Shown in pieces: positions 1-63,590 of a stretch of DNA of 64,000 nucleotides (its first letter is position 1; every line of letters begins with the position of its first letter). The DNA is from Haliotis rubra (Eukaryota): NCBI RefSeq assembly GCF_003918875.1, contig NW_025765395.1, positions 62,001-126,000 of the forward strand, read 5' to 3'. The notes under the pieces were generated by a model. The model saw only the letters and a program-made list of their open reading frames with translations. It ran no database searches and was not told where the DNA came from. A program made the translations under genes and the position numbers.

Positions 1-1783
1 AACACCTCTCCACCCAACTCCACAACTACGGCTAATTCGTGCGCACACGACGGCAAGTACTACCAGATTGGCGTGCATTTCAACCCAACACCATGCCAGA
101 GCTGTTTCTGTCCAAGTTCCGGTCGAGCTGTCTGCGTATTCGAGAACTGTGCACTTGCTTTGTGTGTCGACGCTGTAAAACAACCAGACCAGTGCTGTTC
201 CACATGTCCAAATGGTTCGTATTAATAATTCAATTTATCATCCAAAACTGTGTTCCACAGAAAATATTGCTTGTGTGAGATCATACCATATCTCCTGGGA
301 GATATTGTTTTGACAGTAGATTTTTAACAATGCCCTGACATTGCTATGACGTCATGAACTTGACGACGTTACAATGCTATGACATCGCTGCACTGCAAGT
401 CTAATGGTAGTACAGTGTTCAAAGATGTACATTTTTCATTGAAAACTAATGAAGAGTGATTTTTGATGATAAATAGAATCTCACCCTCGTATCTACTGAT
501 ATCAATAATATAAACATTCATTAATAAAAGTAAAATTATCCTCGGCAAGCCTCGGATATTTGTATTTTTATCAACTCGTGTTGATATTATTGTTATCAGT
601 GGACACTTGGGTGAATTTTTCTATCTATCAATAATACTAGGATATTATTGTAAACAAACAGCATTATCCCAGCAATTATAGAAGCAACGATGTAAACACA
701 GATGACAGCAGTGATATAAGTAACGATCTATGCAGAAATGTGAGTAACCATTTCAGCAGAGATGTAAGCAATAATATCAACACCGATGTAAACAGAATTG
801 TAAGCGACCATTTGAGCAGAGATATGTATCATCCTATGTAAACATCATGTAAGAACCAATGTAACAATGATATAAACCAAGATGCAATCAGATAAATGTA
901 AGCATGTCCCTCCACATAATGAAACTGACCCCACCAGTAGATTAGTTACCTCCCCTTATAAAAATGAGAAAAAACTGCCTGGTCAGAATGTAGTGGAAAG
1001 GCTCATATGGTTGTAGTGGCCTGTAGTACCTTCCAAAACTCTGTATAAATCAAGTCAACTGGTACACCACTGTCCCCTACCGTTATAATGCCACATAGCA
1101 GTAATTATTTAGCAACGAGCTACACAATCAAGTAAGTATTCAGTATTTCAGGTCATATGACCTATAGTACGGCTGTTTTTATATTTTTGCATTGCAGTGT
1201 CACGTGGAAATATAGATATACATACATTTATTACCGTCTAATTTCAAAACTCATTTTTAGGAACATTGAAAGATATAATACTATATTTATATTGTTCAAT
1301 AGTGTAAGCATGTAAGGTGGATGTTTGCCCATTTATTGAGTGCATCAACTCCTGTAATCGACTCTTGCCCCTCTATATCACGAGTCTTGCTCTTCATGAG
1401 ATGAATCATGCCCCTCCGTGACATTAATCTGGCCCCTCCAGTGGGTGAATCTTTCCTCTCCATCGGTCGTATATATTTTATATTTAGGGACAGGAAATAC
1501 GAATTTACACTGGCGCTAAGAAATATTGGTACAAAAGTTACATCATTCTATTTACCTTCCTTACAATACTGTTCAGTTAAACAGCTGTGTTCAGATGTCA
1601 TTCACGAAGCTGCTTCACGGGCTAACCATGTTTTCTCTGCTAGGCTGGAACTGCAAGTGCGGTGACGTCATCATCAAGATGGGCCACGTGTATCACCCTG
1701 ACAAGGCGACTGTGTGCCAGTGCAACGTCATCCCCTCCGCCTCCGGGAGAATTGACTTAAAGGCAAATTGCACCTCAGTGTAA
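1..1783 (+). CDS. VWC2/Brorin-like secreted Cys-rich protein, copy 1 (5' partial); exons <1..214 and 1644..1783
   Basis: Frame 1 from base 1 reads NTSPPNSTTTANSCAHDGKYYQIGVHFNPTPCQSCFCPSSGRAVCVFENCALALCVDAVKQPDQCCSTCPNG (10-Cys VWC pattern). Donor G|GTTCGT at 214/215; acceptor ttttctctgctag|GC at 1643/1644. Exon 2 reads GWNCKCGDVIIKMGHVYHPDKATVCQCNVIPSASGRIDLKANCTSV*, with AATAAA overlapping the stop. Confidence 0.85.
236..629. mobile_element. Non-autonomous insertion with terminal hairpin in the copy 1 intron
   Basis: Absent from the paralogous intron of copy 2 (13440-13460). Imperfect inverted repeat at 468..629. Confidence 0.5.
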
Positions 1784-1919
1784 ATAAATACACATCTAAA
1801 TACAAAGTTTTCAGCAATGATTGATGAGTTTCAATAGTTAACAGAAGGTCGTCCTCTGGCAATCTGGTAGTTCTGACAGCCGTACGTATACGCTGCTGGC
1901 GCCATTTCTCTCCATATAT

Positions 1920-2072
1920 GGGGGATTGGGTAGCCAAGTGGTTAAAGCGTTTGTTCGTCACGCACATTCTTTGTTCGATTCCCCACATGGGTACAATGCG
2001 TGAAGCCCTTTTATGGCCCGTGATGTTGCTGGAATATAGTTAAAAGCGGCGTAAAACTAAACTCAATCACTC
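1920..2072 (+). mobile_element. tRNA-derived SINE, family A (degenerate)
   Basis: A-box TAGCCAAGTGG, B-box GTTCGATTCCC, and body ending GCTGGAATA...AAAAGCGGCGTAAAAC plus CACT tail, shared with many copies in the window. Confidence 0.75.
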
Positions 2073-2350
2073 TGCAATGCAGGCAAGCTACAAGGTACAT
2101 GCGAGAGGTAACACAATATTTGCGAAGTTCTCCAACAAGGCCAACTCCAGTATTTTTAGAACACGTCCGACAAACTTTTCACCCACATACCCATCACTCA
2201 CTCACTCACTCATTCACTCTAACGCATAAATATACGGACCTTTGGTGGACTACGGATGCAGGGACGCCGAGGGGCACTCGTTAACCGATTAATTACAGTA
2301 ATGATACAAAGCGTGTACCCGAATTATATGTTGGCATGTGACGCAGAAAT

Positions 2351-13160: not shown

Positions 13161-16100
13161 ATGAATGCTATTCTCCTCCTCTGCCTGGTGAGTTCATGCC
13201 TGGTGACCGTCATCAACACCTCTCCACCCAACTCCACAACTACAGCTAGTGCGTGCGCACACAACGGCAAGTACTACAAGATTGGCGAGCATTTCAACCC
13301 AACACCATGCCAGAGATGTTTCTGTCCAAGTTCCGGTCGAGCTGTCTGTGTGTTCGAGGACTGTGCACTTGCTTTGTGTGTCGACGCTGTAAAACAACCA
13401 GACCAGTGCTGTTCGACTTGTCCAAATGGTTCGTATTAATAATTCAGTATATCAGTGATACTCGCAAATAGGAATGTATTTTGTTTTAAACAAACATACA
13501 AACAAACAAACAACATTATCACAGCAATTATAGACGCAACGATGTAAGCACGGATGTTAGCAATGATTTAAGTAACGATCTATGCGGAAATGTGAGCAAC
13601 TATTTCAACAGAGATGTAAGCAATGCTATGAGTACCGATGTAAGCAGAATTGTGAGCGACCATTTAAGCAGAGATGTACGATTCTGTGTAAAACATCATG
13701 TAAGCACCAATGTAACACGGATATACACATAGATGTAAGCAGATAAATGTAAGCGGGGATGTAAACAGATTAATGTAAGCAGAGATGGGAGTGACAGTGG
13801 AAATTATGTGTGAATCGACGTAAGCAGAGATGTGTTTAGATAAAAGTACAATATAGAACAAACTTTATGGATAACAACTTCATTTTATTCCCAGAAAAAT
13901 TGTTATCCATAAAAAGTTTGTTCTATATTGTACTAGTAACTTCTAAAATGCCACTCAAAGAAGTTAGATAAAAGTAAGCGGAGATGTTAATAGTGGCTCA
14001 GGAACAAGGTAGGCAATCATGTAAGCAGAAATGTAATCAATGGTGTAAGCATGTAACGTAAATCTTGTCCCCCCATATCATGAAACTGACCCCACCAGTA
14101 GATTATTTACCTCCCCTTATACATGAGAAAAAATCATTCTCCAACTCCTTGGGTCTGAATATATACTGAGTCAAAAAGGAAACTTCACATTCTTTCTTCA
14201 GGGTACTATAAAAGAACAAGAGATGGTAAGATGGTTAAATTGTTATTATTTCATTGCTGAGATCTGTGTGATGTACTCGATACACTGACAGTGCCATAAT
14301 CAGTTCCATTAGGCTTCACCGCCGTTCCAAAACATGGGTATATAGAATGTCAAGTCACAAGAATAAAAATGCGAAATTTCTCAGTTCAATATCGTGAATG
14401 GCCGCCCCGCGCATTCACCACTGCCAAACACCGTCTCCTCATCGACTGCCTGATGCTTGTGAACACGTGCTTGGGGATTCTGCGCCATTGCTCTTGCAAG
14501 GCAGCGCCAAGTTCCTGAAAATTCTGAGGTTGGTTCCTAAGACCACGAAGCCTTCTCCCCAGTGCATCCTAAACGTGCTCTATTGGATCAAGGTCAGGGG
14601 ACCTTGATGGCCAGTCCATGACGTTGATTCCAGCGTTTTGAAGGAAATTTCGTGTCAACATCGCGGTATGCGGCCGAGCATTATCATGCTGGAACTGTAG
14701 ACCTGGGCCATGAGCCGCCATGAAAGGAACGAGTTCAGGGGTGAGCACCTGGTCGCGGTAAGCAGCAGCTGTGAGGTTTCCACGGATGACCAGAAGTCGG
14801 GAACGGTTGTTCCCACAGAAAGCACCCCACACCATGCAACTGCCGCCCCCGAATCTGTCGACTTCCTGTACACAACATTGGGCATACTGTTCACGACGTC
14901 GTCTCCAGACTCTTTGCCCGCCGTCCGCGAATCTGAGGGTAAACCTGGATTCATCGCTAAAGACGACTCGATTCCAGTCTCTTTGGGTCCAACGGAGGTG
15001 ACGTTGGGCCCACAGCAGACGATGACGTTGATGAAACGGCGTCAATATTGGCCCACGATATGGACGTCGAGAATGGAGATTGGCTGCCCGCAACCGATTT
15101 CGAATGGTCTGTGAGGACAGTCGACCTCTAAACATCTCAGCCCTGGTTCGTGTAGCCGGCAGAAATCTGTCACGTAGGTGACGTAGGACGATTTGACCGT
15201 CTTCTGCTCGTGACGTCACACGTGAACGACCCGACCTTGGGCGATCAGAAGTGGTGCCAGTTTGTTGTAGACGACCTCGCAAGTCATACACAGTACGACG
15301 GCTGCATCCCATTGCTCTTGCGACGTCAATAACTGATCTTCCCGCTTGCAACATGCCAACGGCACGTTCACGTTGCACATTTGACAATCGTGGCATTTCA
15401 AAGTACCGTTAGAACTGTGGTTTAAAAGTGTTTTTTTCTATTCTTGAGGCCAATGCAAACACGTGCATATGAAGAAAGATAGGGATCCCATTTCGGATAC
15501 ATAGATGTATCATCAGAGAAACATTATTCATTATTTTTCAAATTACATTTTGTGAAGTTTCTTTTTTTTCAGTATATAGTTGAAAAGTTCATTGGGATGA
15601 AGTGCAGTGTAGTACCGTCTAAACTCTGTATAAATCTAGCACAAGTCTAACTATAGTACACCACTGCCCCCTACTCTTAAAATGTTATATACTTGGAACA
15701 TTGTTGCACAAAGAATAAGACTGCCACATAACAGTAATGATTCAGCAACGAGGTACACACTCAAATAAGTTGAGATGTGTTCAACAGTGTCAGCTCGTAA
15801 GGTGAATGTTGCCCATTTATTGATCGCATCAGCTCCTGTAGATGACTCTTGCCCTTCTATATCATGAATCTTGCCCTTTATAAGATTAATCTTGCCCCTC
15901 CGTGACATTTATCTGGCCCCTCCAGTGGGTGAATCTTTCCTCTCCATCGGTCGTATATAGTTAGGGATAGAAATATACGAAGTCACCCTGGCGCTACGGA
16001 ATATTGGTGAAAACATACGCGAGACCAAAACTTTCTATTTATCTTCCTCACAATACTGTTCAGTTAAACAGCTGTGATCAGATGTCGTGTTACTAGCGAG

Positions 16101-16297
16101 GTGGTTCGTTCACGAAGCTGCTTCACGTGCTCACCATGTTTTCTCTGCTAGGCTGGAACTGCAAGTACGGTGACGTCATCATCAAGATGGGCAACGTGTA
16201 TCACCCTGACAAGGCGACTGTGTGCCAGTGCAACGTAAGCCCCTCCGACTTCGGATCCGGAAGAATTGCCTTAGGGGCAAATTGCACCTCAGTGTGA
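13161..16297 (+). CDS. VWC2/Brorin-like secreted protein, copy 2; exons 13161..13428 and 16152..16297
   Basis: Signal peptide MNAILLLCLVSSCLVTVINT, then CAHNGKYYKIGEHFNPTPCQRCFC...CVDAVKQPDQCCSTCPNG. Donor G|GT at 13428/9; acceptor ctag|GC at 16151/2. Exon 2 reads GWNCKYGDVIIKMGNVYHPDKATVCQCNVSPSDFGSGRIALGANCTSV*. Confidence 0.9.
14164..15574 (-). mobile_element. Tc1-family (DD34E) DNA transposon in the copy 2 intron
   Basis: Imperfect about 27-bp TIRs (TACTGA...AAACTTCACA) and TA flanks. The empty site is visible in the copy 1 intron near 990. Confidence 0.92.
14386..15396 (-). pseudogene. Tc1 transposase, 336 codons with one nonsense codon (W to TAG at 14569..14571)
   Basis: Paired-like N-terminus (RPRSGRSR), FSDESRF, QHDNARPH, and SPDLDPIEH with 34 residues between D and E. 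The frame continues after the stop as DALGRRLR...AVVNARGGHSRY*. Confidence 0.92.
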
Positions 16298-26785: not shown

Positions 26786-28673
26786 TCACACTGATGTACA
26801 ATTTGCCTTTAATTCGAGGATGCCGAAGCCCATGATATAGTGATGTAATTAACCGTGTGCTTTGTTGCACCACATCTATCCCCCAAAATATTCCTTAGCG
26901 ATAACCCATTGGTTATGGGGCAAGGGAGACTAGGTATGTTGATTCACTTAATTATACAAGACCAGTGGAGGTGACACTTCACCTGCCTGAAGGGCCAGAC
27001 TGTAGAGGGGGGGTAACATTCATCTCACGAAGGGCCAGATTCATTTAATGTAAGGATAATACCCACCTTACATTCTTACACTATTGAACTGTTACACATC
27101 TCACATTACAACTCAAGCTACAAGAAGACCAGCAACTGTGTGGAGATAATTTTTTCTCTGGATGCTCAGCCTAGTCTAGACTAACAACTAGTCTCTGAAA
27201 TGAACATGATTTACGGATAAAACAGTTCATAATAAAAAAAATAAGAAGTAATGAAAAGGAGCCCTGAGACATTCTTAATTTTCAGAAACTGAAGAAATCT
27301 AGACTTGCCACATATTCTAGACTTGCATGGACTTTCTTGGATATATTTGTTTCAGGGTCTGTATGACAGACAAGGCTTAGACCTGTTTCTTATAAAAATA
27401 CTGGACCATTGTTGCAGTGAGGTGAGTGTTATCATCTCTGTCGCTGCTGCTATAATCGCTGCTTTCGACATTACACTGCCTCTGTTTTGTACTACCACTA
27501 TGAAACCTTTGTAGTGATCTGTGAGGTGAGGTGAAATTTGGTTTTACGTCGTGCTTGAGAATATTTCGCTCATACGTGTCGTGACGTGCATGCATGTGTA
27601 TGTGTATGTGCGGCTGCTTGTACTAGCCCAAACTGAAGCTGGTTGTATAGTGCTAGCGCACTGAGATACCATGCCGCAGTGAAGCATGAATACCCCACTC
27701 TGACACATTATACTAACTCCGAGCCGACCAGTCCTTGTTGTACCCATTAATATCGAGCGCCAGGCAGGGACCAACAAGTACCATATTTTAACGTCTTTTT
27801 GGTATGACGCGGTCGGGGATCGAACCCGCGACCTTCCGCTCTCCAGGCGGACGCTCTAACCACTACACCACGGAGGCGGTCCTTGTAGTGATCTGTATTA
27901 ATATGTTAACCTAGTTAACCTTTCAATACAATTGTACATCATATCTCGTTGTTGTACGTTGGTTTCACATAGGTTTCACATTTTTTTACAGACTTCTTGG
28001 TTAACGTTTGGTTTTGAAGTCACCTTGGGATTCAACATTGTAACATTTACTGACATCTCTGCTAACATGGCTGACACATGATAGTTTAGATCTTGGTTTT
28101 CATCTCTGCTTACATTTATCGTTCTACATCTTTACTAATATCACCGCTTACATGGGTGCTTATATGAACGTTTACATGGCTGCTGACATCTCCGCTCAAA
28201 TGGTTGCTTACATCATTGCTTATAACTTTGCCTATATCATTGCTTACATCTTGCCATTTGAAGTTGGACAGCACTACTTATATCATTGCTTAACTCTCAG
28301 TTTGTATGCTTTTTTAAATTATGCTTCTACCATTACTCATTTTGCTGCTTACGTCATTGGTAAACACTCCTGTATGCGAAAGTTATTGATATGGTGAAGT
28401 TATCGAACCATTTGGACAGGCTGGGCAGCACTGGTCTGGTTGTTTCACGGCATCAACACACATAGCAACTGCGCAGTCAATGACAAAGCAGGCAGCTGGA
28501 CCGAGAGTTCCGCAGAAACACTTCTCACATGGTGTTGGACTGAAGTGCTCGCCGACCAAGTAGAATTTGCCACGATGTACGCATCCGCCGGGCATGGTTG
28601 TGTGGATGTATGGAGGATTGGTGTTGATGACGGCCACCAGGCAACTCAGCAGGAAGAGCAGGATACTGGTCAT
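26786..28673 (-). pseudogene. VWC2-like copy 3: intact exon 1 (28673..28409); exon 2 mostly deleted (remnant 26833..26786)
   Basis: Exon 1 reads MTSILLFLLSCLVAVINT...CVHRGKFYLVGEHFSPTPCEKCFC...DQCCPACPNG followed by GT. Only MGFGILELKANCTSV*+AATAAA of exon 2 remains. The acceptor and three Cys are lost in an approximately 200-bp deletion relative to copy 4. Confidence 0.8.
27523..27882 (-). mobile_element. SINE family B in the copy 3 intron
   Basis: Near-identical to 17373..17732. TSD TTGTAGTGATCTGT. Confidence 0.85.
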
Positions 28674-32366: not shown

Positions 32367-33812
32367 ATGACCAGTATCCTGCTCTTCCTGCTGAGTTGCC
32401 TGGTGGCCGTCATCAACACCATTCCTCCATACATCCACACAACCATGCCCGGCGGATGCGTACATCGTGGCAAATTCTACTTGGTCGGCGAGGACTTCAG
32501 TCCAACACCATGTGAGAAGTGTTTCTGCGGAACTCTCGGTCAAGCTGCCTGCTTGGTCATTGACTGCGCAGTTGCTATGTGTGTTGATGCCGTGAAACAA
32601 CCAGACTAGTGCTGCCCAGCCTGTCCAAATGGTTCGATAACTTTACCATATCAATAACTTTCGCATACAGGAGTGTTTACCAATGACGTAAGCAGCAATA
32701 TGAGTAATGATAGAAGCAATGATTTAAACCATCATGTAACGTCTGAGTTAAGCAATGATATAAGCAATGATATAAGCAATGATATAAGCACTTATATAAG
32801 CAACCATTTAAACGGAGATGTCAGCAGCCATGTAAACGACCATGTAAACTCCCATGTAAGTAGTGATATAAGCAAGGATGTAGAAATATAAACGAAGCAG
32901 AGATGGAAGCCAAGATGTCACCAATTCATGTGTCAGCCATGTTAGCAGACATGTCATACATGTCACGTGGTGATCTGGAACCAAACGTTAAACAAGAAGG
33001 TTGTAAACAAAAAACAACGAGATGTAATGTACAATTGTGTTCTAAGATTAACTAAGTTAAATCAATTAAATCAATACAGATCACTACAAGGTTCCCGAGT
33101 GGTGGTACAAAATAGAGAGGCAGTATAATGTCGATTATAGCAGTAACGACAGAGAGATGATGATACTCGCCTCATTGCAACAGTGGTCCAGTTTTGAGTA
33201 AAATAGGCCGAGGCTGAGAGTATCCAGCTTAATAATGATCTCCATCCAGTTGCCGCTCTACATGAAACTTGAGATGTGATGTGAGATAAGAGGAAAGCCT
33301 AAGCACGTTAAAAATATTCCAGACGATTCTCTAACTCCCTGGAGTAGTACACCACTGCCCCCCATTGTTATAACGTTATACATTTGGAACATTGTTACAC
33401 AAAGCATGACACTGCATGCATGATTCATCAATTAGGTAAACATTCAAGTAGGTAAAAATGTGTTCAATACTGTAAGCATGTGAAGTGGTTCTTGTCCTTC
33501 CATTAAATGAGGGATAGATTTGGTGCAACAAAGGACATGGTAAATCTCATCATTGTATCTACCGTTATTACAATACTGTTTAGTAAAGCAACTGTACAAA
33601 TGTCGTGCTACTGGCGTAATCGGTCATTCATGAATTTGCTTCCCACGTTCGCCATATTTTGTCTTCCAGGCATGAACTGCAAACACGGTGACGTCATCAT
33701 CAAGATTGGCGAGGTGTATCAACCTGACAAGGCGACTTCGTGTCAGTGCAACTTCAATATCCCCATGGACCATGGCTTACTTGAATTAAAGCCAAATTGC
33801 ACCTCAGTTTGA
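32367..33812 (+). pseudogene. VWC2-like copy 4 with premature stop (CAG to TAG at 32607..32609); exons 32367..32631 and 33670..33812
   Basis: Exon 1 is 98% identical to copy 3 but has DAVKQPD* before the CC motif. Exon 2 reads GMNCKHGDVIIKIGEVYQPDKATSCQCNFNIPMDHGLLELKPNCTSV* and is intact, with an acceptor and AATAAA. Confidence 0.85.
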
Positions 33813-37410: not shown

Positions 37411-39261
37411 ATGATCGGTATCCTCCTCTGCCTGCTGAGTTTATGCCTGGTGGCCGTCATCAACACCTCCCCAGTCATCCTTACAACTACGCCCAACGCA
37501 TGCCTAAACAACGGCAAATACTACATGGTTGGCGAGTCTTTCAGACCAACGCCCTGCGAGCAGTGCTTCTGTGCAGCTGCCGGTCGACCTGCCTGCATAT
37601 CCATTGACTGCGCAGTTGCTATGTGTGTTGATGCTGTGAAATCACCAAACCAGTGTTGTTCAACATGTCCAAATGGTGAGATGTAAACAATGATATATAA
37701 GCAGTGATGTAACCAACCGTTTAAGTGGAGATGTCAGTAGCCATGTAAACGATCATGTAAGCACCAATGTAAGCGGTGTCATAAGCAAAGATGTAGAATG
37801 GCAAATGTAAGCAGAGATGGAAGCCATCTTCCATCAATTATGTGTCAGCCATGTTAGCAGAGACGTCAGTAATGTTACGTTAGCCGAGAAATCTGTAAAA
37901 GAACGCGATGTGACACCAACATACAACAGACAGATGTGATGTACAATTGTATTCTAAAATAAACTAAGTTTAAACTTCGGTACAGATCACAACAAAATTT
38001 CAGAGTGGTAGTACAAAACAGAGAGGAAGTATAATGTCGAAAGCAGCGATTATAGCAGCAACGACAGAGATGATACTCGCCTCACGGCAACAATGGTCCA
38101 GTTTTGTGTAAAATAGGCCAAGGCTGAGTATCCAGGGTACGAATGATCTCAATTGTTGTACAAAGAATACGACTGACACATAGCAGTAATGGTACTGGCT
38201 GCCGAACAGTTATCGCAATATTTTAGCGGTATTTACAAAATTACTGCGCCGTTCGTTACATTAATGAAATGCAATTAATAATGATAGTACTTAATTAGCT
38301 ATTCACCGATGTGTCTAGCCCGTTTACTGCCGCCGATCATGTTTTTATAATATATAACGCGGCGGAAGGGAATCATGGCAGTACAAATAGGAGTTTTATC
38401 ACAACTATCTGTAACAGTTATCGCCATTTCAGAATTTTTCAGGTCATTCGAGAAATAATATATATTTATATTATAAAGTAAAATCGAATAATTGACTGTG
38501 TGACTAGTTGAGTGTGTGTTTACAGTACATTGATAGGGAATGAAACAGTTAACGACTTTTGTGAACTTAAACTTGCTACTATATAGATCCTGTGACTAAG
38601 TTCAAAATTTGTTGTAGGGCTCATAACCTTATCTTCAATTTTGCTCTTTTCTGTTACTGACCGCGAAGAATTATCTTTTGCTGTCCTTTATTGTTGTCAA
38701 ATACCGTGGTATTTAATACCGGAATTGGAATTGACCGGAAGTGCGCACGTGTGATACTGATGTATTGGCGATAACGGTTATGCAGCGATACCTGTTCGGG
38801 AGCCAGTACGGGAAAGAGGTAACCCTCAACTAAGTTGAGATGTAATCAATTGTGTAAGCATGTGAAGTGGAATATCCTTGTAATGAATCTGTCCCTTTGT
38901 GAGATGAATGGTAACCCTATTTACATGAATCTTGTATAAATAAGTGCAAGCAATATACGACGTACCCCTTGCTCCATAAAGTGTTACAAAAGCACATCAC
39001 TATATCTTCCAAACTTACAATACGGTTAGTTAAGCAAATGTACAAATGTCGTATTACTGGCGTAATCAATCTTTAATGAATCTGCTTCACACGTTCGCCA
39101 TGTTTTGTCTTCCAGGCTTGAACTGCAAACACGGTGACGTCATCATCAAGATGGGCGAGGTGTATCACCCAGACAAAGCGACTGCGTGTCAGTGTAACTT
39201 CGGTAACCCCTACCTCGGCTTCGGCAGCCTTGAATTAAAGGCAAATTGCACCTCAATCTGA
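37411..39261 (+). CDS. VWC2/Brorin-like secreted protein, copy 5; exons 37411..37675 and 39116..39261
   Basis: Exon 1 reads MIGILLCLLSLCLVAVINT...CLNNGKYYMVGESFRPTPCEQCFC...NQCCSTCPNG with donor GTGAGA. Acceptor ttccag|GC. Exon 2 reads GLNCKHGDVIIKMGEVYHPDKATACQCNFGNPYLGFGSLELKANCTSI*, followed by AATAAA. Confidence 0.92.
38192..38809. mobile_element. Non-autonomous DNA transposon in the copy 5 intron
   Basis: 25-bp TIRs GTACTGGCT(G/C)CCGAACAG(T/G)TATCGC with 23/25 matching. Absent from paralogous introns. Confidence 0.8.
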
Positions 39262-42846: not shown

Positions 42847-45703
42847 ATGATAGGTATCCTCCTCCTCTGCTTGGTGAGTTCAGCCCTGGCAGCTGTCATC
42901 AACACCACTCCAGTCACCCTCACAACGACGCCTAACACATGCGAACGCCATGGCAAATACTACAAGATTGGCGAGCATTTCAAACCAACTCCATGCGAGA
43001 GGTGTTTCTGTGGAGCTTCCGGTCGAGCTGCCTGTGTATACGTGGACTGCGTACTTGCTTTGTGTGTAGACGCTGTCAAACAACCAGACCAGTGCTGTTC
43101 AACCTGTCCAAATGGTTCGTTAATCTCATCATACCAATGGTTCGTTAATCTCAACATACCAATAGCCTTCGCAAATAGGATTGCATAAGCAAATATGTAG
43201 GCAGCGGTATGATTAATGGTATAAGCATGATATGTAAGAGTGAGTGAGTTAGAATCACATATTTCAGACATCCGTGACTAACACAAGCCATACGTGGATA
43301 ATAGATATTGTTTGATTGTAAAATCGGTCAAGAAATGACAGTAAAACAATTAGAATATCACAGATATACATTTAAAAGTAGCATGTAAGTTATACAGGTA
43401 AGGTAATACAGTATAAAACGGGCTATAGATCGCCAACAACTGAAAGTAGATCACCATACTATGCACCATGGGGACTTACAGTACTGTCCATGGACCCTAG
43501 CTGGATGTACATCATTCCTTTAGTTGTTGGCAATTATTCAGAAAATTAGCCAAACATTAAAAGCACATAATTTTTTATATTCTACGATTAAAACCACGAA
43601 GGATGAAAAATGCTTTGAATGAAATGGGACATACGTATCTTCTCTGGGGAAATAGTTTCCTTTATTTCAACACCATTTGAAGGTGTGGCTATTATCAAAT
43701 TCAGCTATTTATTCATCCTACCAGGGGCGGTGGGGTAGCCTATTGGTTAACACGTTCGTTCGTCACGCTGAAAATCCGGGTTTGATTCCCCAAAATCCGG
43801 GTTCGATTCCCGGGTACAAAGTGTGAACCCCATTTCTGGTGTCTCCCGTCGTGATATTGCTGGAATATTGCTAGAAGCGGCGTAAAACAAAAATCACTCA
43901 CTCAATCACAAACTCATTCAACCAAATTAACATTCACAAACTAACTGCAATACGTATTATCCAAATTTATCAATTAGAACGATTTCTTTTAAGAAACTAA
44001 GATTTAAATGATAACATACCTTAAAAGATCCTTTGAAAGTTGAAACTGTGAAATTGTAATCCCTTGTGATGGAAAATCTAGGACAAGCACGACATGACCG
44101 TGACTCTTTCATCACAAGGGACACAAAACTTTCGATGAATGCTTCATCTATCTATTTATATTTGCTGTGGCCAGCATGGGCGGTGGGGTAGCTGTGTGGC
44201 TAGAGCGTTCGCTCGTCACACTGAAGACCCGGGTTCGATTCCCCACATGTGTACAAAGTGTGCAGCCCATTTCTGGTGTCTCCCGCCGTGATATTGCTGG
44301 AATATTGCTAAAAGCGGCGTAAAACCATACTCACTACTGCGATCAACACGACATCGTCACAGGATGACCCCTGCAAATGTGACAACTCAAACAGGTGTTA
44401 ACGATAGTTTGCATAAATTTACGTAACTTATTGATACCTGCTTGGGTGTCACCCTTATTTTGCATTAGTTCTCTGATAACATTTATCATCTTATAATCGG
44501 TGTACGGCATCAAAAGTGGTGTCACAGCACACTGCCTCAGCAGCAGAATCAGATATTGTGTAACCAACATGTTCCAACATGGCCAGGTAACCAACAGAGG
44601 ATGATGTCGTATTGGCCAGTAGCAGAGATCATTATAATTCCATTATTTCGAATTAAAATGGATGTTAACATGACATATTACAAAGAGCCTGAAGACAAGA
44701 ACGTGAGTGTGAAAATATTAGGTGCTGCTTTATGTACATTATTTATATATTCAAGAGGAGTTGTTATAATGGCGTTTGCTCAGGCTGGGAAAAGTTTTTA
44801 TCTAGTACTCTGGAAGATACCATTAGCACCCATGTAAGCAATTATACAAGTAAAGGTTCACAAAAAATAAACGCAAGCAGAGATGGAAGACACATTGTAA
44901 CAATAACAGGCCAAATGCGAAAAAATAGCTAGCGCCTAATAATATCGCTGGATATATATGGTGCAACAAAGGCACATGGTAGTAGAAACAACAAAACCCG
45001 TTCCCCATCCATAAGAAGTCTCTCCTAAAATCAGAGTCGACTGTGCAATTTTTGTGACTGTATTATGGGTATATATATTGTTTCAAAAGTGTTACAGCTG
45101 TTGTCATTATGATTATTATTAGTCTTCCGTCCACATAATACTTGGGACCAGTGAAGTCCATGCTTGTCCATGCTTGTCCATGTTTGTCCATGCTTGTCCA
45201 TGCTTTCTCCATGCTTTCTCCATTCTTGTCCATGCTTCTCCATGCTTGTCCATGCTTGCCCATGCTTGTCCGTGCTTCTCGTTAAAGGCGACTAACGGCA
45301 TCGGGTGATCAGGCTCGCTGACCTGGTTCACGCAGGGCATCGTATCTCAATTGCGTAGATGGATGATCATGGTGTTGATCACTGGATTGTCTGGTCCAGA
45401 CTCGGTTATTTACAGACCGCAGCCATATAGCTGGAATATTGCTGAGTGCGGCGTTAAAAACAATCAATCATCATGGCAGTTCGAATGTTGAGTAAACAAT
45501 TGTGTAACACTGGGACATTCAAGAAGATGCTTCACTTGTTGATATTTTGACTTCCAGGCTGGAACTGCAAGCACGGTGACGTCATCATCAAGATGGGCGA
45601 GGTGTATAACCCTGACCCGACGACCTCGTGTCGATGCAACAACAGTCCTTTCAGCCTGGGAATCGGGATCCATGGCTTGAATGCAGAATGCACTGCCATG
45701 TGA
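42847..45703 (+). CDS. VWC2/Brorin-like secreted protein, copy 6; exons 42847..43114 and 45558..45703
   Basis: Exon 1 reads MIGILLLCLVSSALAAVINT...CERHGKYYKIGEHFKPTPCERCFC...DQCCSTCPNG followed by GT. Acceptor ttccag|GC. Exon 2 reads GWNCKHGDVIIKMGEVYNPDPTTSCRCNNSPFSLGIGIHGLNAECTAM*, followed by AATAAA. Confidence 0.92.
43724..44335 (+). mobile_element. Two SINE family A copies (43724..43910 and 44178..44335) in the copy 6 intron
   Basis: tRNA A/B boxes and the family body. Confidence 0.8.
45158..45275. repeat. 10-bp tandem repeat (TCCATGCTTG)n at the 5' part of a family C SINE
   Basis: Visible directly. The unit equals part of the SINE core CCCATGCTTGTC. Confidence 0.9.
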
Positions 45704-46232: not shown

Positions 46233-47291
46233 CTACATGGAGCCAGTGACGCCAGTTGCCTTATGCACACACAATGCTTCGTGTCCATGTGGGCCGAACA
46301 GATACGAGAAGTCGGTAGAACAGCTGCACACGGTGTTGGTGTCAGGATGGTACGTATCCCCCGACTTGATGACCACGTCCTTATATTTACAGTTGTTTCC
46401 TGAATTAAAATATATGAAGAAATGAATAAATAAAGCCAGTAGCACAAAACAGAGACACTGAACGTTCTACTGTGACGTTTTTCTTCTTTGACGCTGTGCA
46501 TCGATGCTGTAAACCACTAGCATGCTAGGAGAAAGCTGGAATACCGATAGCGGCATCAAACAAAATTCACTAGTTCACGTGCAGTCAAAGTGCAAATTAA
46601 ATACGTGTGTCTCGATATGAAAATGGAATTTTAGCAGTTCGTGTTTCATTGAATAGTGAATACTGCTAGCAATAGGGGGATATCCAGTCTTGCGTCACAC
46701 ATACTAAACATAACATTTCACATGTATCAAACACACTTACTGGACACCGGCACGTAAATTGTACTGAACGATGGCACGTGACACGTGCTGAACGATTGCA
46801 CGTCACACGTATTGAACAATGACTTGTCGCACATATTGAACAACAGCACGTCACACGTACTGAACAATGAGTCGTCACATGTACTGTACAATAACACGTC
46901 ACACATACTGAACAATGACACAGTACACGTACTGTATAATAACAGGTCACACGTACTGAGCAATGACACATCACACGTACTACTGAACAATGACACGTCA
47001 CACATACCGAACAATGCCACATCACTCACCATCTGGACAAGTCCCACAGCAATGGTTTGGTTTCTGTACAGGGTTGACGCACATCGGAGGAGCACAGTCA
47101 ATCGCCATGCACATCATCCTGCCTTGACTACACGTGCAGGGGGAACATGGGTTCTTATTTACGCGTTCCCCTTCCTTGTAGGTGACCCCGTTGACTACAC
47201 ATCCATTCTCATGGCTGATCACTGCACCCTCTATTATAAGGGAGAAAAGCCCCAAAAGAAGGGTACAGGCAGCTAACCTAATTGCCATCAT
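46233..47291 (-). CDS. VWC2/Brorin-like secreted protein, copy 7 (divergent subfamily); exons 47291..47030 and 46399..46233
   Basis: Exon 1 reads MMAIRLAACTLLLGLFSLIIEGA...CVVNGVTYKEGERVNKNPCSPCTCSQGRMMCMAIDCAPPMCVNPVQKPNHCCGTCPDG with donor GTGAGT. Acceptor ttcag|GA. Exon 2 reads GNNCKYKDVVIKSGDTYHPDTNTVCSCSTDFSYLFGPHGHEALCVHKATGVTGSM*. Confidence 0.92.
46740..47020. repeat. About 24-bp minisatellite (CACGTCACACGTACTGAACAATGA) in the copy 7 intron
   Basis: Visible directly. Confidence 0.85.
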
Positions 47292-48718: not shown

Positions 48719-48989
48719 ATGATCGGAACACTCGTGTCATCTGCCATATTCCTGGCGCTCGTCGTTTGCTCCGAGTCTGCATCACTTCCGGTGCTTACAG
48801 CTGCAGCTGACGAATGCGTGTATCAAAATAAGACTTACCAGATTGGTGTAAGAACCGGGAGCGCGTGCATGCCCTGCACGTGCATGCAGGGTGGTCGGAT
48901 GTCTTGTCTGGCTATCGACTGCTTCTTCCCTTCACTCTGCGTCGACCCTGTTCGGAAACCGGGACAGTGCTGTCAGACTTGTCCAAACG
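48719..48989 (+). CDS. VWC2-like first exon, copy 8 (no private exon 2 found)
   Basis: MIGTLVSSAIFLALVVCSESA...CVYQNKTYQIGVRTGSACMPCTCMQGGRMSCLAIDCFFPSLCVDPVRKPGQCCQTCPNG with donor GTATTT. The unspliced frame stops at 49051. Confidence 0.85.
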
Positions 48990-53794: not shown

Positions 53795-54065
53795 ATGATC
53801 GGAACAGTCGTGTCGTCTGCCATATTCCTGGCTCTTGTTGTTCACTCCGAGTCTGCATCACTTCCGGTGGTTGCAGCTGCAGTTGACAAATGCGAGTATC
53901 AAAACAAGACTTACATGGTTGGTGAAAAGACAGACAGTGCGTGCATGCCCTGTGAGTGCACCCAAAGTGGCCGTATGGCTTGTATGGTGATTGACTGCTT
54001 CTTCCCGTCTTTCTGTGTCGACCCTGTTCGGAAACCGGGACAGTGCTGTTCATCTTGTCCAAACG
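53795..54065 (+). CDS. VWC2-like first exon, copy 9 (no private exon 2 found)
   Basis: MIGTVVSSAIFLALVVHSESA...CEYQNKTYMVGEKTDSACMPCECTQSGRMACMVIDCFFPSFCVDPVRKPGQCCSSCPNG with donor GTATTT. TATA box at 53751. Confidence 0.87.
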
Positions 54066-56962: not shown

Positions 56963-57045
56963 ATGGTCGGCACATTCGTATTCCTAGCTCTACACCGAAT
57001 CTGCATCACTTCCCGTTATTGCAGCTGCAGCTGCAGTTGCCACAC
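56963..57045 (+). pseudogene. Decayed VWC2-like first exon (copy-9 type), truncated
   Basis: ATGGTCGGCACATTCGT...CCGAATCTGCATCACTTCCCGTTATTGCAGCTGCAGCTG matches the 5' end of copies 8, 9 and 11 with deletions. Its promoter (55460..55575) matches 53645..53755. Confidence 0.75.
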
Positions 57046-57755: not shown

Positions 57756-58008
57756 ATGTTGTTTTTTCTATCCATCTGCTTCCTTCCACTGTTGACCAGT
57801 GAAGCTGCTTCCATTGCAACCAATAACGATCTTTGCGTCATTGGTAACAAAACGTATCATGCGGGCGAGACCATTAGCAATAACCCCTGCCGGCCGTGCA
57901 GGTGTGGAGGGGGAAATGCCATCTCTTGTATGATAGTAGACTGTGCCATGGTCATGTGTGTGGATCCCACCAGGAAGGATGGCCAGTGTTGCCAGTATTG
58001 TCCTAATG
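57756..58008 (+). CDS. VWC2-like first coding exon, copy 10 (divergent subfamily)
   Basis: MLFFLSICFLPLLTSEA...CVIGNKTYHAGETISNNPCRPCRCGGGNAISCMIVDCAMVMCVDPTRKDGQCCQYCPNG with donor GTAAGA. Confidence 0.9.
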
Positions 58009-59027: not shown

Positions 59028-59164
59028 GAAGGAACTGCAAGTACAACGATCACGTCATCAAAGAGGGAGAGGTCTACAAACCCGACGCCAACACCGAGTG
59101 TAAATGCAACACGCAACTATTCGGTCCCGACGCCCTGAAGGCACTGTGTGTCAAGTCGGCCTAG
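59028..59164 (+). CDS. VWC2-like terminal exon for copy 10, possibly shared with copies 8 and 9
   Basis: Acceptor gttgcag|GA. Reads GRNCKYNDHVIKEGEVYKPDANTECKCNTQLFGPDALKALCVKSA*. Missed by the ORF track. Confidence 0.9.
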
Positions 59165-60361: not shown

Positions 60362-60899
60362 AATATAGGATATTTCTATAGCGCACATATCCAAGCAACT
60401 AGTGCTTGCTCAAGGCGCTGGTATTTTTTCCGTCGCTCACTGAATCTCAATCTCAACGGCACATAATATTATCAATCTCAACGGCACATAATATTATCAA
60501 TCTCAACTCCCTTGGGAGTATACAACTCTTGCAGCCACTAGGCGCACCGAGTTATTGTGGCTTTCCCATCCTAACGAGGTACCCATTCACAGCTGGGTGG
60601 ACTGGGACACATAGTCACAGTACTTTGTCCAAGTTCACTGCAGGTTGCTGTACCCGCAACTAGGTGTTTGCACGTATTCATGTGGCCACCATCTGGTCAT
60701 CTACCAACGGATTCGTGGGTTCTTTTAAGTGCACAGGGTTGTGTACTGCACACTAGGGGTTGTGACAACACTGAAAGAGTCTGCACACAAAGTTGACCTT
60801 CAGGTTTTTACACCCGGTCACAGGTGGGCTCGATCCCGACACGTCAACCTCTCTGGATCACTAGCCTGGCGCCTTAGACAGCTCGCCCACCGCGCCCCC
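60362..60899 (-). mobile_element. SINE family D (tRNA head, Nin/Deu-like core, LINE-like tail)
   Basis: Minus strand has head GGGGGCGCGGTGGGCGAGCTGTCTAAGGCGC and TGCACTTAAAAGAACCCAC plus CAGTCCACCCAGCTGTGAATGGGTACC. A related fragment lies near 22200..22320. Confidence 0.6.
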
Positions 60900-62274
60900 T
60901 GTTACATAGCTAGCAAATTCGTAGCAATGCTTCAAAAGTCACATTTCCCATCAGCAACACATTCTAATACGACGAGTAAAAGCAAAACAGTTGCAATACA
61001 CAGTGGGGAAGCTGTCATTTATTTCACGACACTTTCTAATGTACATATTAACATTGTGTTTCTCCAACATAGTCTGTATCACCGACGTTCTTATCAATAA
61101 CTTGTGGACCATGGTACCTAGGATACAGTGGCTGACCATGGATTGGCACTAACACTTTTTCACCAGGACAAACATTTCTCTCTTGAGACTCTCTTGTGAT
61201 AATGTATTTTCATCACCATCCCTTTTCCTGGGACACTTTCAACTACGCCTAATAGACTTTACAACCTTCAGGAAGCCAGCCCAAAATGGTTAAACATTGT
61301 AAATAAAACCATGAAGCCAATGTTTTAAGGTACACGAAAAAGCTAAGTTATAAGAATTATAAGCATTCCTGGACTGACTCCTTGAAAGCTGACTCCCTCA
61401 AGGGAATGCCTTCATCCCAGTCCTTCTCAGATTGAAAAGCTATGTCTTATCATATTCGTAGACGTGTTGAGCTCCCTCAGATTCAGGATGATATGCAGTA
61501 GACTTAACCTAAGTTATGGCTTACTGATGCATATCCTGCTGTAATACATCTGACAAGAAATTGGAGTCTTGATCTGAACGACTAGTCCAAGGCAAACCAA
61601 ACAAAGTGAAGAACTTCACCAAAGCCTTGATAATGACCTAACCTGTAATTTTGGATAAAAGGGTAGTCTCTGAGAACCTTAGGATAGGAAGCATGTACTG
61701 ATTACCTGACCACCATTGATGTCCCTGCTGAAGGGTTCGGCAAAAGCTGGAACTGTTTTCAAAGTAGCGGCTGTTTTATTGGGTTTACCAACCATCTGAC
61801 ATACATGTCGGGTTTTGCACAAAATAGCTAAATAATGTCGCAGATTAGGCCAACAGAAATGTAGCAAAATTTGTCAGAAGTGACAATAATGAAAGGTGAC
61901 TCAGATGAAAAAATCGTAAAACATGATTTGAAATCAGTTTTGAAATGCAATCTGATGAAAAGCTCTCATGCATTATCAGCAGGTAGATCTGGCGGATTTA
62001 TGCTGTTGGTTGCCTTTATTATCTCTCTAAGAACCCGCCAGTGACCATATATACCTCAGTGCAAGTTTATTAGCGTTACATGCCCCTGCGTGTGGGATTC
62101 TCGTGAGGTGAGGTGTAACTCCAGCAAAGGCGACGTGATCGTTCTTTCAGTACCATTGTGGTTTCACCGAATTCAGATTATCTGACCAAACAAATTGAAA
62201 CAAAAAAGTCTTGCAGATAAGCCAACCTACTATAAATGTAGCGTCTCAACATTATCGCTCACATCTCGTTCAGA

Positions 62275-63590
62275 ATGATCGGAACAGTCGTGTCGTCTGC
62301 CATATTCCTGGCTCTTGTTGTCTACTCCGAGTCTGCATCACTTCCGGTGGTTGCAGCTGCAGCTGGCCAATGCGTGTATCAAAACAAGACTTACATGGTT
62401 GGTGAAAAGACAGACAGTGCGTGCATGCCCTGTGAGTGCACCCAAAGTGGCCGTATGGCTTGCCTGGTGATTGACTGTTTCTTCCCTTTTCCTTGTGTCG
62501 ACGCCGTTCAGAAACCGGGGCAGTGCTGTTTGTCTTGTCCAAACGGTATTTATGCATATATTTCTGTTCAAGTATCATGTTTAAGTTTACAGACTTGAAG
62601 GTGATGTGTAAAAACCTGTATTATTATTAAAGCTAGTGCTGATAAATATTTGATAATCTTAAAATTAGTTTGGCTCTCATTTGAGTCACCTCATGGTTCT
62701 TCAATCACATACCCGGACCTAACGTATTGACACCCAAGTTGTTCATATTCTGACCATGTACTTCTTCGCATACGCCTTTAATCTGGAGTTATCTCCCCTC
62801 CGATAACTTGAAATGAAAAACAATATGTGTTTTAGTCACTTACTGGAACATGACACGCGTAAACCTTACCACAAGTCATTCCACACAATTTTTAAAAAGA
62901 CACTCCAGACAATCAATCGCTATCTGTGTGTTGTCAGCTGAAAATATGTCTTCCAATATTCGACAGCTGTTAAGTTGAAATATCATACACATGTATATGT
63001 TTTGATGTGTTCCTTTTACTGAGGATTTATTTTAAAGTGACTGGTCCATGAGTCCACCTTCCAAACAATTAACTGCTGTTATGTACTTCAATGTTATTGA
63101 GAAATAGAAAATAACATTTTTGGTCACTGTAGCCCTACAGTTTGAGATAAATGATTACTCTGACATAAAAAGTGTGATGTGTGTGAGTGGTATTTGCGTC
63201 ATCCACAACTCAAATTGTGGTAACACCAGATGAACACGGATTGGAGAGTGTATTCTGCCTGGTGTACGGAACTTTGCCCACAATGAACTTGGAACAATTA
63301 CGTGAAATAACAGGGTTATTTTTCATTCTCAACCTTAAACCTCGTCAACCCATTCTACCTCAAAACGGTATGGTCTTGCGATTATTCCATGGACATGGCC
63401 ATGGCCATGCATGTAGAGTCCAGAAAACCAATCTGTCTGTGTTGATGTTGCAGGAAGGAACTGCAAGTACGGCGATCACATCATCAAGGAGGGAGAGGTG
63501 TACAAACCTGACGCAAACACCGAGTGTAAATGCAACAAGCAACTATTCGGTCCCGACGCCCTGAAGGCTGTGTGTACCAAGTCGGCCTAG
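62275..63590 (+). CDS. VWC2/Brorin-like secreted protein, copy 11; exons 62275..62545 and 63454..63590
   Basis: Exon 1 reads MIGTVVSSAIFLALVVYSESA...CVYQNKTYMVGEKTDSACMPCEC...GQCCLSCPNG with donor GTATTT. Acceptor gttgcag|GA. Exon 2 reads GRNCKYGDHIIKEGEVYKPDANTECKCNKQLFGPDALKAVCTKSA*. TATA at 62231, AATAAA at 63611. Confidence 0.92.

What the first reader, a model, noticed from the sequence alone, without database searches (positions are those of the whole stretch)
1..63590. Expanded, diversifying cluster of minimal secreted Brorin/VWC2-like proteins (about 12 copies in 64 kb)
Seen: 11 recognisable first exons plus one decayed copy, all with a 10-Cys VWC domain (signal peptide wherever the 5' end is in the window) ending CP(N/D)G at the same phase-1 donor. 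There are 8 complete second exons and one remnant, each complete one with a 4-Cys half-domain. Four subfamilies (copies 1-6; 7; 8/9/11; 10) occur in both orientations, with pseudogenes among them. Established: the pattern C.Y.GK.Y..GE.F.P.PC..C.C...CV.P...P.QCC..C.NG.NC.....I..G matches the C-terminal region of vertebrate VWC2/VWC2L, which are low-copy BMP antagonists. The Lymnaea opsonin granularin is a small VWC-related protein. Inference: a roughly 130-140 aa stand-alone version has undergone birth-and-death expansion typical of immune-recognition, mucus, shell-matrix or secreted effector families rather than of a developmental regulator.
Basis: partly seen in the sequence, partly recalled or inferred. 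Interest (0 to 1): 0.85.

Follow-up and report, generated by a model that had tools for sequence, protein, structure and literature searches.

The report
Abalone cluster of short Brorin-like genes
This 64-kb stretch of the blacklip abalone genome carries a tandem cluster of small secreted proteins built from one and a half von Willebrand C domains; the cluster is real and at least partly expressed, but it belongs to a family found across molluscs and already machine-annotated, and its function is untested.

Summary
The window is Haliotis rubra contig C505:62001-126000. It holds 11 first exons (signal peptide plus 10-Cys VWC, Pfam VWC2L_2nd/VWC) and one decayed remnant. All 11 end at the same phase-1 G|GT donor. 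There are 8 complete second exons and one remnant.

Exon 2 encodes a 4-Cys copy of the N-terminal VWC subdomain. It matches Pfam VWC2L_C below threshold. A confident AlphaFold model repeats the strand pattern of the first subdomain.

The two N gaps lie between copies and touch no VWC exon or intron.

RNA-like contigs from two runs of one study join c10 exon 1 to its exon 2 at the predicted intron. NCBI already models c5, c6, c7, c9, c10 and c11 as "VWC2-like".

- The ~130-150 aa form occurs across molluscs and is not special to abalone.
- Pairwise dN/dS within subfamilies is about 0.3-0.75, so positive selection is not shown.
- c8 and c9 have no exon 2 of their own. NCBI isoforms splice c9 to downstream exon 2s, and H. 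rufescens isoforms share one exon 2, so part of the cluster looks like an alternative-first-exon locus.

Function (BMP-type ligand trap, opsonin or other) remains inferred.

The parts
1..214 (+). c1 exon 1 (VWC domain). The ATG and the signal-peptide start lie 57 nt upstream of the window.
   Evidence: donor G|GTTCGT
1644..1783 (+). c1 exon 2 (half-domain; carries an extra fifth Cys)
13161..13428 (+). c2 exon 1 (signal peptide plus 10-Cys VWC). It is intact, but no NCBI protein was returned for it.
16152..16297 (+). c2 exon 2. The 2723-nt intron holds a Tc1/mariner-like ORF.
28409..28673 (-). c3 exon 1. The ORF is intact, but this is the truncated copy of an inverted pair with c4.
26786..26830 (-). 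c3 exon 2 remnant (last ~15 codons only)
32367..32631 (+). c4 exon 1, with an in-frame TAG at 32607-32609 (pseudogene)
33670..33812 (+). c4 exon 2 (complete)
37411..37675 (+). c5 exon 1 (NCBI XP_046560511, 136 aa)
39116..39261 (+). c5 exon 2
42847..43114 (+). c6 exon 1 (NCBI XP_046560513, 137 aa)
45558..45703 (+). c6 exon 2
47030..47291 (-). c7 exon 1 (NCBI XP_046560512, 142 aa)
46233..46399 (-). c7 exon 2
48719..48989 (+). c8: an A-type first exon with no exon 2 of its own. The ORF and the GTATTT donor are intact.
53795..54065 (+). c9: an A-type first exon with no exon 2 of its own. NCBI isoforms X1 and X3 splice it to the exon 2s at 59028 and 63454.
   Evidence: no RNA contig coverage
56943..57033 (+). 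Decayed A-type first-exon remnant, just downstream of a DDE transposase ORF
57756..58008 (+). c10: B-type first exon (NCBI isoform X4, 129 aa)
59028..59164 (+). Exon 2 used by c10 and, per NCBI X1, by c9. RNA-like contigs join it to 58008.
   Evidence: X1 record 6, X3 record 11
62275..62545 (+). c11: A-type first exon (NCBI isoform X2, 135 aa)
63454..63590 (+). c11 exon 2 (also used by c9 in NCBI isoform X3)

Best explanation
Shown: this is a tandem multigene locus of Haliotis rubra in which copies have been gained and lost over time. It encodes secreted proteins of 129-142 aa. Each protein has a signal peptide, one complete 10-Cys VWC domain (Pfam VWC2L_2nd type, exon 1) and a 4-Cys copy of the N-terminal VWC subdomain alone (VWC2L_C-like, exon 2). 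A conserved phase-1 intron after CP(N/D)G separates the two parts. The proteins belong to a family of 'short Brorin-like' proteins found across molluscs.

Shown for the DNA layout, and supported only by gene models for the splicing: on the + strand from 48.7 to 63.6 kb the locus is not a row of independent genes. Alternative first exons (A-type c8, c9, c11; B-type c10), each with its own ATG and signal peptide, are followed by only two exon 2s.

Inferred: the proteins act as soluble extracellular binding modules. The only characterised homologues (Brorin/VWC2, VWC2L, chordin-type CR domains, CV-2 VWC1) bind BMP-class cystine-knot ligands, and in the one solved complex (CV-2 VWC1 with BMP-2) the contact runs through the N-terminal subdomain. 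The most likely activity is therefore trapping or presenting BMP/TGF-beta-type ligands. Two such subdomain surfaces would be available per molecule. Paralogues and alternative first exons would vary the exposed loops while the Cys scaffold and the CPNGxNC junction stay fixed.
For: - Gene structures, donors and acceptors.
- Domains: PF23334 at 27-61 bits and PF00093 on exon 1. Exon 2 matches PF23331 VWC2L_C at 19-21 bits over profile positions 1-40 of 42, and also the first half of PF00093.
- Internal repeat: residues 34-58 align to 94-119 at 38% identity, E 3e-5. The second Cys of the VWC pattern is replaced in exon 2.
- Structure: AlphaFold with a 44-sequence alignment gives pLDDT 86. Strands 92-116 and 131-136 repeat the pattern of 31-65. 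The best solved match is the collagen IIA VWC domain 5nir (Z 5.9, rmsd 2.4 over 65 of 66 residues, model residues 28-93). CCN3 and CV-2 VWC1 (the latter solved in complex with BMP-2), NEL/NELL2 and FnI modules also match.
- Expression and splicing: contigs of runs X1 and X3 join 58007/8 to 59027/8 and skip the 1019-nt GT..AG intron, while a DNA-like run keeps the intron.
- Alternative first exons: NCBI isoforms X1-X4 combine c9, c10 and c11 first exons with the two exon 2s. H. rufescens X1 (A-type) and X2 (B-type) share an identical exon 2. The order A, B, exon 2 recurs at C505:132-134.4 kb and on C1549.
- Constraint: 14 Cys and the P-x-G-x-N-C junction are invariant or nearly so in 44 mollusc sequences. 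dN/dS is below 1.
- Distribution.
Against: - No binding data exist for any mollusc member.
- The VWC2L_1st domain is absent, and exon 2 is below the Pfam cut-off for VWC2L_C.
- Tandem expansion, pseudogenes, structural differences between C505 and C1549/C1833 and dN/dS of 0.3-0.75 are more typical of genes facing the environment or pathogens than of developmental BMP regulators.
- Expression evidence from reads covers c10 only. c9 exon 1 had no coverage in the runs laid, so the c9-to-exon-2 splices rest on NCBI models that I could not inspect.
- The tissue of expression is unknown.
Confidence: 0.5

Rival explanations
1. Humoral immune or recognition proteins. Like the Lymnaea opsonin granularin and the arthropod single-VWC (SVWC/Vago) proteins, these small secreted VWC proteins would bind microbes or act as cytokine-like signals. 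Tandem duplication and alternative first exons would then supply recognition diversity.
For: - The cluster shows gain and loss of copies, with pseudogenes and haplotype-level structural differences.
- dN/dS is moderately high.
- Musca domestica has 35 SVWC genes, mostly in clusters, and MdSVWC1 binds bacteria as a pattern-recognition receptor (PMC11515477).
- Granularin is cited there as a mollusc single-VWC opsonin.
- A 'VWC2' gene appears in a table of differentially expressed genes shared by snail lines of the same phenotype in a Biomphalaria/Schistosoma study (PMC13619432).
- A GH128 beta-1,3-glucanase-like ORF sits inside the cluster.
Against: - The proteins are not SVWC-type. They have 10 Cys, not 8, and gave no Pfam SVWC hit at E<=1.
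- The best matches are the Brorin-type families.
- One subfamily is at least 90% identical across four Haliotis species, which is conservative for a recognition protein.
- No dN/dS above 1 was seen, except in one 44-codon pair.
- No infection-response data exist for these genes.
Confidence: 0.27
2. Secreted structural or luminal proteins with no signalling role, for example components of mucus, shell or egg matrix, or digestive-gland secretion. High dosage rather than diversity would then drive the copy number.
For: - A VWC-domain protein is among proteins changing in abundance in the octopus skin-mucus proteome (PMC11431876).
- The VWC domain is strongly over-represented among digestive-gland-specific transcripts of a mussel, alongside glycosyl hydrolases (PMC5549309).
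- Copies c1-c6 carry a Thr/Pro-rich linker with N-x-S/T sites between the signal peptide and the domain.
- A GH128 ORF lies inside the cluster.
Against: - These literature hits concern the VWC domain in general and were not shown to be this family.
- The paralogues are highly diverged (under 40% identity between subfamilies), which does not fit a simple dosage model.
- No abalone shell or mucus proteome hit was found.
Confidence: 0.15
3. Largely an assembly or annotation illusion. The copy number would be inflated by uncollapsed haplotypes, and most copies would be dead.
For: - C1549 (40.5 kb) is collinear with window 37.6-60.3 kb at 92-98% identity and is probably the other haplotype. C1833 repeats one of its junctions.
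- c3, c4 and the remnant are broken.
- c2 and c8 have no NCBI protein.
- The haplotig c10 has a one-base homopolymer frameshift.
Against: - The 11 first exons lie on one contig. The closest pairs within the window still differ: c1/c2 have dS 0.11 and 79% identical flanks, and c3/c4 are inverted with 85-92% identical flanks. They are therefore paralogues, not haplotypes.
- Seven copies are intact two-exon genes.
- Orthologues exist in three other Haliotis genomes.
Confidence: 0.05

Closest known systems
Vertebrate Brorin (VWC2) and Brorin-like (VWC2L), secreted BMP antagonists
   Same: Both are secreted. The exon-1 domain is best matched by Pfam VWC2L_2nd. The exon-2 tail aligns over the whole VWC2L_C profile, and the CP(N/K)GxNC junction between the two is shared with unnamed database proteins that carry strong VWC2L_2nd and VWC2L_C matches (P0116, P0156).
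   Different: - The VWC2L_1st domain is absent.
- The tail has 4 Cys and scores below the Pfam cut-off.
- The family is multi-copy, tandem and partly pseudogenised, whereas the vertebrate genes are low-copy (from established knowledge, not tested here).
- BMP binding is untested.
Mollusc 'VWC2-like / brorin-like' predicted proteins, such as Magallana gigas K1QVQ6 'Brorin' (132 aa), Lottia V4B4P0, Mytilus VDI82151-53 and Gigantopelta XP_041367618
   Same: They share the same architecture of one and a half domains and about 130-150 aa, the same invariant Cys and the same junction. Many read-through gene models break off at CPNG, which implies the same intron position. Mytilus also has adjacent copies.
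   Different: These are machine annotations with no published function. The abalone locus adds at least five diverged subfamilies in one place and the alternative-first-exon layout. Pecten and the chiton Liolophura have two-unit (230-239 aa) forms.
Arthropod single-VWC proteins (SVWC / Vago) and Lymnaea granularin
   Same: They are small secreted proteins with a single VWC. SVWC genes form tandem expansions (35 genes in Musca, PMC11515477). This is the functional analogy behind the immune reading.
   Different: SVWC domains have 8 Cys and their own Pfam family, which was not hit. They have no half-domain tail.
Variable-first-exon loci (clustered protocadherins, UGT1A)
   Same: Several first exons, each with its own start codon and signal peptide, lie upstream of fewer shared downstream exons. 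Isoform models join distant first exons to them.
   Different: The scale is tiny (3-4 first exons, two 'constant' exons). The constant exon encodes a 45-aa extracellular half-domain. RNA read evidence here covers only the proximal c10 splice.

Membership tests
VWC domain (PF00093, chordin-like CR repeat) | 10-Cys pattern C..CxxCxC..C..C..C..CCxxC and a Pfam score over the cut-off | tested here: met
   All 11 first exons show the 10 Cys. PF00093 scored 29-39 bits (cut-off 27.6) for 6 of the 9 translations tested. c8 scored 22 bits, and c9 and c11 gave no PF00093 hit, but all nine pass the related PF23334.
VWC domain (PF00093, chordin-like CR repeat) | Two-subdomain VWC fold | tested here: met
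   Model pLDDT is 86. Collagen IIA VWC 5nir aligns with Z 5.9 and rmsd 2.4 over 65 of 66 residues. CCN3 and CV-2 VWC1 also match. The Z values are middling, as expected for a 60-residue domain.
VWC2/VWC2L (Brorin family) | VWC2L_2nd domain (PF23334) | tested here: met
   Scores of 27.4-60.6 bits against a cut-off of 27 in all nine exon-1 translations tested. The full protein P0001 scores 65 bits.
VWC2/VWC2L (Brorin family) | VWC2L C-terminal domain (PF23331) | tested here: inconclusive
   19.0 and 21.1 bits (cut-off 27), E 1.4e-3 and 2.9e-4, covering profile positions 1-40 of 42.
VWC2/VWC2L (Brorin family) | N-terminal VWC2L_1st domain (PF23333) before the second VWC | tested here: not met
   Only about 30 residues (signal peptide plus a short linker) precede the single VWC. 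There was no PF23333 hit.
VWC2/VWC2L (Brorin family) | Binds and antagonises BMPs | not testable with these tools
   A co-fold with the H. rubra BMP2/4 mature domain gave no verdict. This needs binding assays.
Arthropod SVWC / Vago | 8-Cys single VWC and the Pfam SVWC family | tested here: not met
   The domain has 10 Cys, and no SVWC family appeared among Pfam hits at E<=1. The consensus pattern is given in PMC11515477.
Variable-first-exon locus | Two or more first exons, each with its own ATG, spliced to the same downstream exon in transcripts | tested here: inconclusive
   The DNA layout and NCBI isoforms X1-X4 in H. rubra and X1/X2 in H. rufescens fit. RNA-like contigs show only c10 to exon 2. 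c9 exon 1 had no coverage.
Gene family with gain and loss of copies (birth-and-death) | Tandem paralogues of several ages, with pseudogenes and lineage-specific copies | tested here: met
   dS runs from 0 (c3/c4) through 0.11 (c1/c2), 0.14 (c9/c11) and 0.39 (c5/c6) to saturated between subfamilies. c3, c4, the remnant and the B-type exon at L002:7689-7928 are broken.

The most novel reading that the evidence does not exclude
Part of the cluster (c8, c9, c10, c11 and the two exon 2s, 48.7-63.6 kb) would be a small variable-first-exon system conserved across Haliotis. In it, whole alternative VWC domains, each with its own promoter and signal peptide, are combined with a shared half-domain exon. 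Together with copy-number differences between haplotypes, this would give a repertoire of secreted binding proteins used for recognition (immune or ligand-selective) rather than for a single developmental BMP-antagonist role.
Probability: 0.25. Interest if true: 0.65.

Novelty: new variant of a known kind. Interest (0 to 1): 0.4.

Why it matters
VWC/CR domains are the binding modules of chordin-class BMP regulators. A family across molluscs that reduces Brorin to one and a half domains, and that abalone has multiplied and partly rewired into alternative-first-exon units, gives a compact natural series for asking what sets VWC ligand specificity. It may also help ask whether the invertebrate 'single-VWC' immune proteins and the BMP antagonists share a mechanism.

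For abalone biology and aquaculture the locus is a candidate secreted-factor cluster that differs in structure between haplotypes.

It is not a surprise of kind. Lineage-specific tandem expansions of small Cys-rich secreted proteins are common in molluscs, and NCBI already annotates these genes.

Tried and rejected
- The look-up of encoding contigs for P0001 returned nothing on record.
- The third word-indexed homologue search, with a 13-sequence profile, returned only 8 proteins, so it could not be used to count copies per species.
- The first AlphaFold run, with 9 close sequences, was poor (pLDDT 60). It was replaced by the 44-sequence run.
- Foldseek against the PDB gave no hit at E<=1e-3. 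The VIA second look gave Z<=5.9.
- Complex prediction of two copies of the H. rubra BMP2/4 mature domain with residues 28-137 of P0001 gave no verdict (score 0.02, controls not run). This is neither for nor against binding.
- In read laying, the many 'joints' from 54336-54367 to 59363-59370 are copies of a repeat present at both places, not splicing. No contig covered c9 exon 1, so the c9 splices were neither confirmed nor refuted.
- Literature searches found no paper on this family in abalone or other molluscs.
- Weak tblastn hits at 19127-19017 and 32083-32142 (E 0.03-1.7) resemble each other, not the family, and were dropped.
- Trees of the 62-aa and 48-aa exon products are mostly unresolved between subfamilies, so no donor or order of duplication is claimed.
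- Joined (spliced) models of c1, c2 and c4 were not built or searched. Exons were handled separately, by reference. Full-length searches used only database proteins by id.
- The N gaps were not filled.

Full report
**Source and the gaps**

The window is Haliotis rubra contig C505:62001-126000. The exon-1 protein of copy c6 is 100% identical to NCBI XP_046560513.

The window has 41% G+C and two N runs, at 20519-20687 and 22325-22485. These gaps lie between c2 (ends 16297) and the c3 remnant (26786). No VWC exon or intron crosses or abuts them. They leave only the spacing, and any hidden copy, unknown. I did not fill them.

**Observation**

A six-frame scan for Cys-rich open frames found 11 first exons. 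tblastn with database proteins and blastn with the window's own exons added 8 complete second exons, one exon-2 remnant (26830-26786, minus strand) and one decayed first-exon remnant at about 56943-57033.

- Every first exon ends ...CP(N/D) plus one G, followed by GT. This is a phase-1 donor.
- Every complete second exon follows a polypyrimidine tract and AG, and supplies the last two bases of the Gly codon.
- Introns are 630-2723 nt.
- Predicted products are 129-142 aa and equal the NCBI proteins where these exist (c5, c6, c7, c10, c11).
- c1's ATG and signal peptide lie just upstream of the window.
- c3 and c7 are on the minus strand.

The clustering is far from chance. A Pfam PF23334 scan of the 1.38-Gb genome listed 19 hits: 9 in this window, 4 further along C505, 6 on the similar small contigs C1549 and C1833, and only one elsewhere.

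**What the protein is**

Exon 1:
- All nine exon-1 translations tested pass PF23334 (VWC2L_2nd, 27-61 bits), and six also pass PF00093.

Exon 2:
- It matches PF23331 (VWC2L_C) over nearly the whole profile, but at 19-21 bits, below the cut-off of 27. It also matches the first half of PF00093.
- Within P0001, residues 34-58 align to residues 94-119 at 38% identity (E 3e-5). The second Cys of the CxxCxC motif is replaced in the tail.
- From established VWC structures, that Cys bridges to the C-terminal subdomain. The 4-Cys tail is therefore best read as an N-terminal VWC subdomain standing alone. That last step is an inference.

Structure:
- An AlphaFold model built on 44 mollusc sequences is confident (pLDDT 86, about 95 over residues 31-120). 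Strands 92-116 and 131-136 repeat the pattern of strands 31-65.
- The best solved match is the collagen IIA VWC domain (5nir: Z 5.9, rmsd 2.4, 65 of 66 residues, model residues 28-93).
- CCN3 VWC, CV-2 VWC1 (solved in complex with BMP-2), NEL/NELL2 and fibronectin type I modules follow.

The N-terminal 15-20 residues are hydrophobic and helical in the model, as expected for a signal peptide. No dedicated signal-peptide predictor was available.

**Distribution**

An exhaustive profile search found 587 representatives at E<=1e-3 and 155 at E<=1e-10. Name look-ups on 20 of them gave the following:

- Single-unit proteins of 128-168 aa occur in Haliotis (rubra, rufescens, cracherodii, asinina), Gigantopelta, Lottia, Patella, Mytilus (three consecutive accessions on one contig), Pinctada, Crassostrea and Magallana (one named 'Brorin'), Mya, Mactra and Potamilus.
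- Two-unit forms of 230-239 aa occur in Pecten and the chiton Liolophura.
- Many database models stop making sense right after CPNG, which is what an unrecognised intron at the same position would give.

In 44 sequences the invariant or nearly invariant features are 14 Cys and the P-x-G-x-N-C junction. So the 'minimal Brorin' is a family found across molluscs and already machine-annotated. I found no paper that studies it.

**State and age of the copies**

- Intact two-exon genes: c1, c2, c5, c6, c7, c10 and c11. c1's exon 2 carries an extra Cys.
- Broken copies: c4 (TAG at 32607-32609), c3 (exon 2 reduced to its last ~15 codons) and the remnant at 56.9 kb, which sits just after a Tc1/mariner-like DDE ORF.
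- c3 and c4 form an inverted pair. Their flanks are 85-92% identical, but exon 1 has dS 0 and dN 0.02.
- Within subfamilies dS is 0.11-0.5. Between subfamilies it is saturated.
- Pairwise dN/dS is 0.28-0.75 in exon 1 and 0.33-0.69 in exon 2. One pair of 44 codons gave 2.8, which is too small a sample to weigh.

This is relaxed purifying selection. It is not demonstrated diversifying selection.

Subfamilies have orthologues in other abalone species. P0003 is a c6-like protein in H. cracherodii, and P0006 and P0161 are the A-type and B-type proteins in H. rufescens. A fifth subfamily, outside the window, is at least 90% identical in four species.

**Beyond the window and haplotypes**

C505 carries further copies at about 128-135 kb and 141-156 kb. 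C1549 is collinear with window 37.6-60.3 kb at 92-98% identity. It then returns to c5-exon-2-like, c6-upstream-like and c9-like sequence, and C1833 repeats that junction. This is most simply another haplotype with a different block structure. The haploid copy number should be taken from one contig only.

**Alternative first exons**

c8 and c9 have intact ATGs, signal peptides, VWC domains and donors, and dN/dS of about 0.3-0.4 against c11. Neither has an exon 2 of its own.

- c10's exon 1 is only about 35% identical to c11's, while their exon 2s are about 89% identical.
- NCBI models one gene with four isoforms: X1 is c9 exon 1 plus the exon 2 at 59028. X2 is c11 exon 1 plus the exon 2 at 63454. 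X3 is c9 exon 1 plus the exon 2 at 63454. X4 is c10 exon 1 plus the exon 2 at 59028.
- In H. rufescens, isoforms X1 (A-type) and X2 (B-type) share an identical exon 2.
- The order A-type exon, B-type exon, exon 2 recurs at C505:132.1-134.4 kb. There the B-type exon is decayed by a frameshift, a CC-to-CR change and loss of the donor. The same order also recurs on C1549.

The DNA layout is shown. The distal splices rest on gene models that I could not inspect.

I reached the first two independently before seeing those notes.

**Expression**

Only one reads call was allowed, so I laid 53700-59600.

- Contigs of runs X1 and X3 (one study, organism coded) cover c10 exon 1 and continue directly into exon 2, skipping 58009-59027. 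The one-base ambiguity in the joint is the shared G.
- These runs have no depth on unique intergenic DNA.
- The DNA-like run X6 keeps the intron, and lacks a 260-nt insertion that C1549 also lacks.

So c10 is transcribed and spliced as predicted. c9 exon 1 had no coverage in these runs.

**Function**

Nothing here tests function directly. The homology argument points to extracellular binding, with BMP-class ligands as the only characterised partners of the closest families. The locus dynamics and the arthropod SVWC and granularin precedents (PMC11515477) point to immunity. General VWC enrichment in a mussel digestive gland (PMC5549309) and the presence of a VWC-domain protein in octopus mucus (PMC11431876) are leads only.

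I give the ligand-trap reading the largest share, but well under certainty.

**Verdict**

This is a real, correctly described and partly expressed tandem family. It is a new variant of a known kind: Brorin-type VWC proteins cut down to one and a half domains. It is of moderate interest, mainly for the alternative-first-exon layout and as material for studying VWC specificity.

Noticed in passing
window 21508-22266 (-), between the N gaps at 20519-20687 and 22325-22485: A 252-aa ORF matches Pfam Glyco_hydro_cc (GH128-type glucanase core) at 163 bits. It is boxed in by the two assembly gaps, so its placement inside the VWC cluster depends on the scaffolding.
   Followed up: partly
window 14569-15396 (-) and 55845-56906 (+): Two Tc1/mariner-like transposase ORFs (HTH_Tnp_Tc3_2 plus DDE_3, and DDE_3 alone). 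The first lies inside c2's 2.7-kb intron. The second ends 37 nt before the decayed A-type first-exon remnant and may have disrupted it.
   Followed up: partly
G000:C1009:76675-93763 (L012-L016): Five TGF_beta-family mature-domain exons (114-117 bits) lie in tandem at a regular spacing of about 4.2 kb. They look activin-like by eye. This may be an expanded ligand array in the same genome that has the expanded VWC cluster.
   Followed up: no
window 58288-58547 (c10 intron): A 260-nt insertion is present in C505 but absent from C1549 and from DNA-like contigs of run X6, so it is a polymorphic insertion.
   Followed up: partly
window 54307-54456 and 59357-59413; also 17372-17730, 27521-27881, 35119-35476, 59939-60254: Short interspersed repeats show very high depth in all runs. 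They produce false 'joints' of about 5 kb between 54.3 and 59.3 kb in the read layout.
   Followed up: partly
L007:1604-1620 (C1549:21604-21620) versus window 57756-57775: The haplotig copy of c10 has T5 instead of T6 just after the ATG, which shifts the frame. This is either a homopolymer assembly error or a null allele. The RNA-like contig of run X1 also shows an 11-base gap upstream, in 57721-57761.
   Followed up: no
window 5624-6281, 35279-35827, 30055-30867, 46669-47113: Tandem repeat arrays give long Cys-rich open frames in several frames. They are unrelated to the VWC family and could mislead a Cys-density scan.
   Followed up: no
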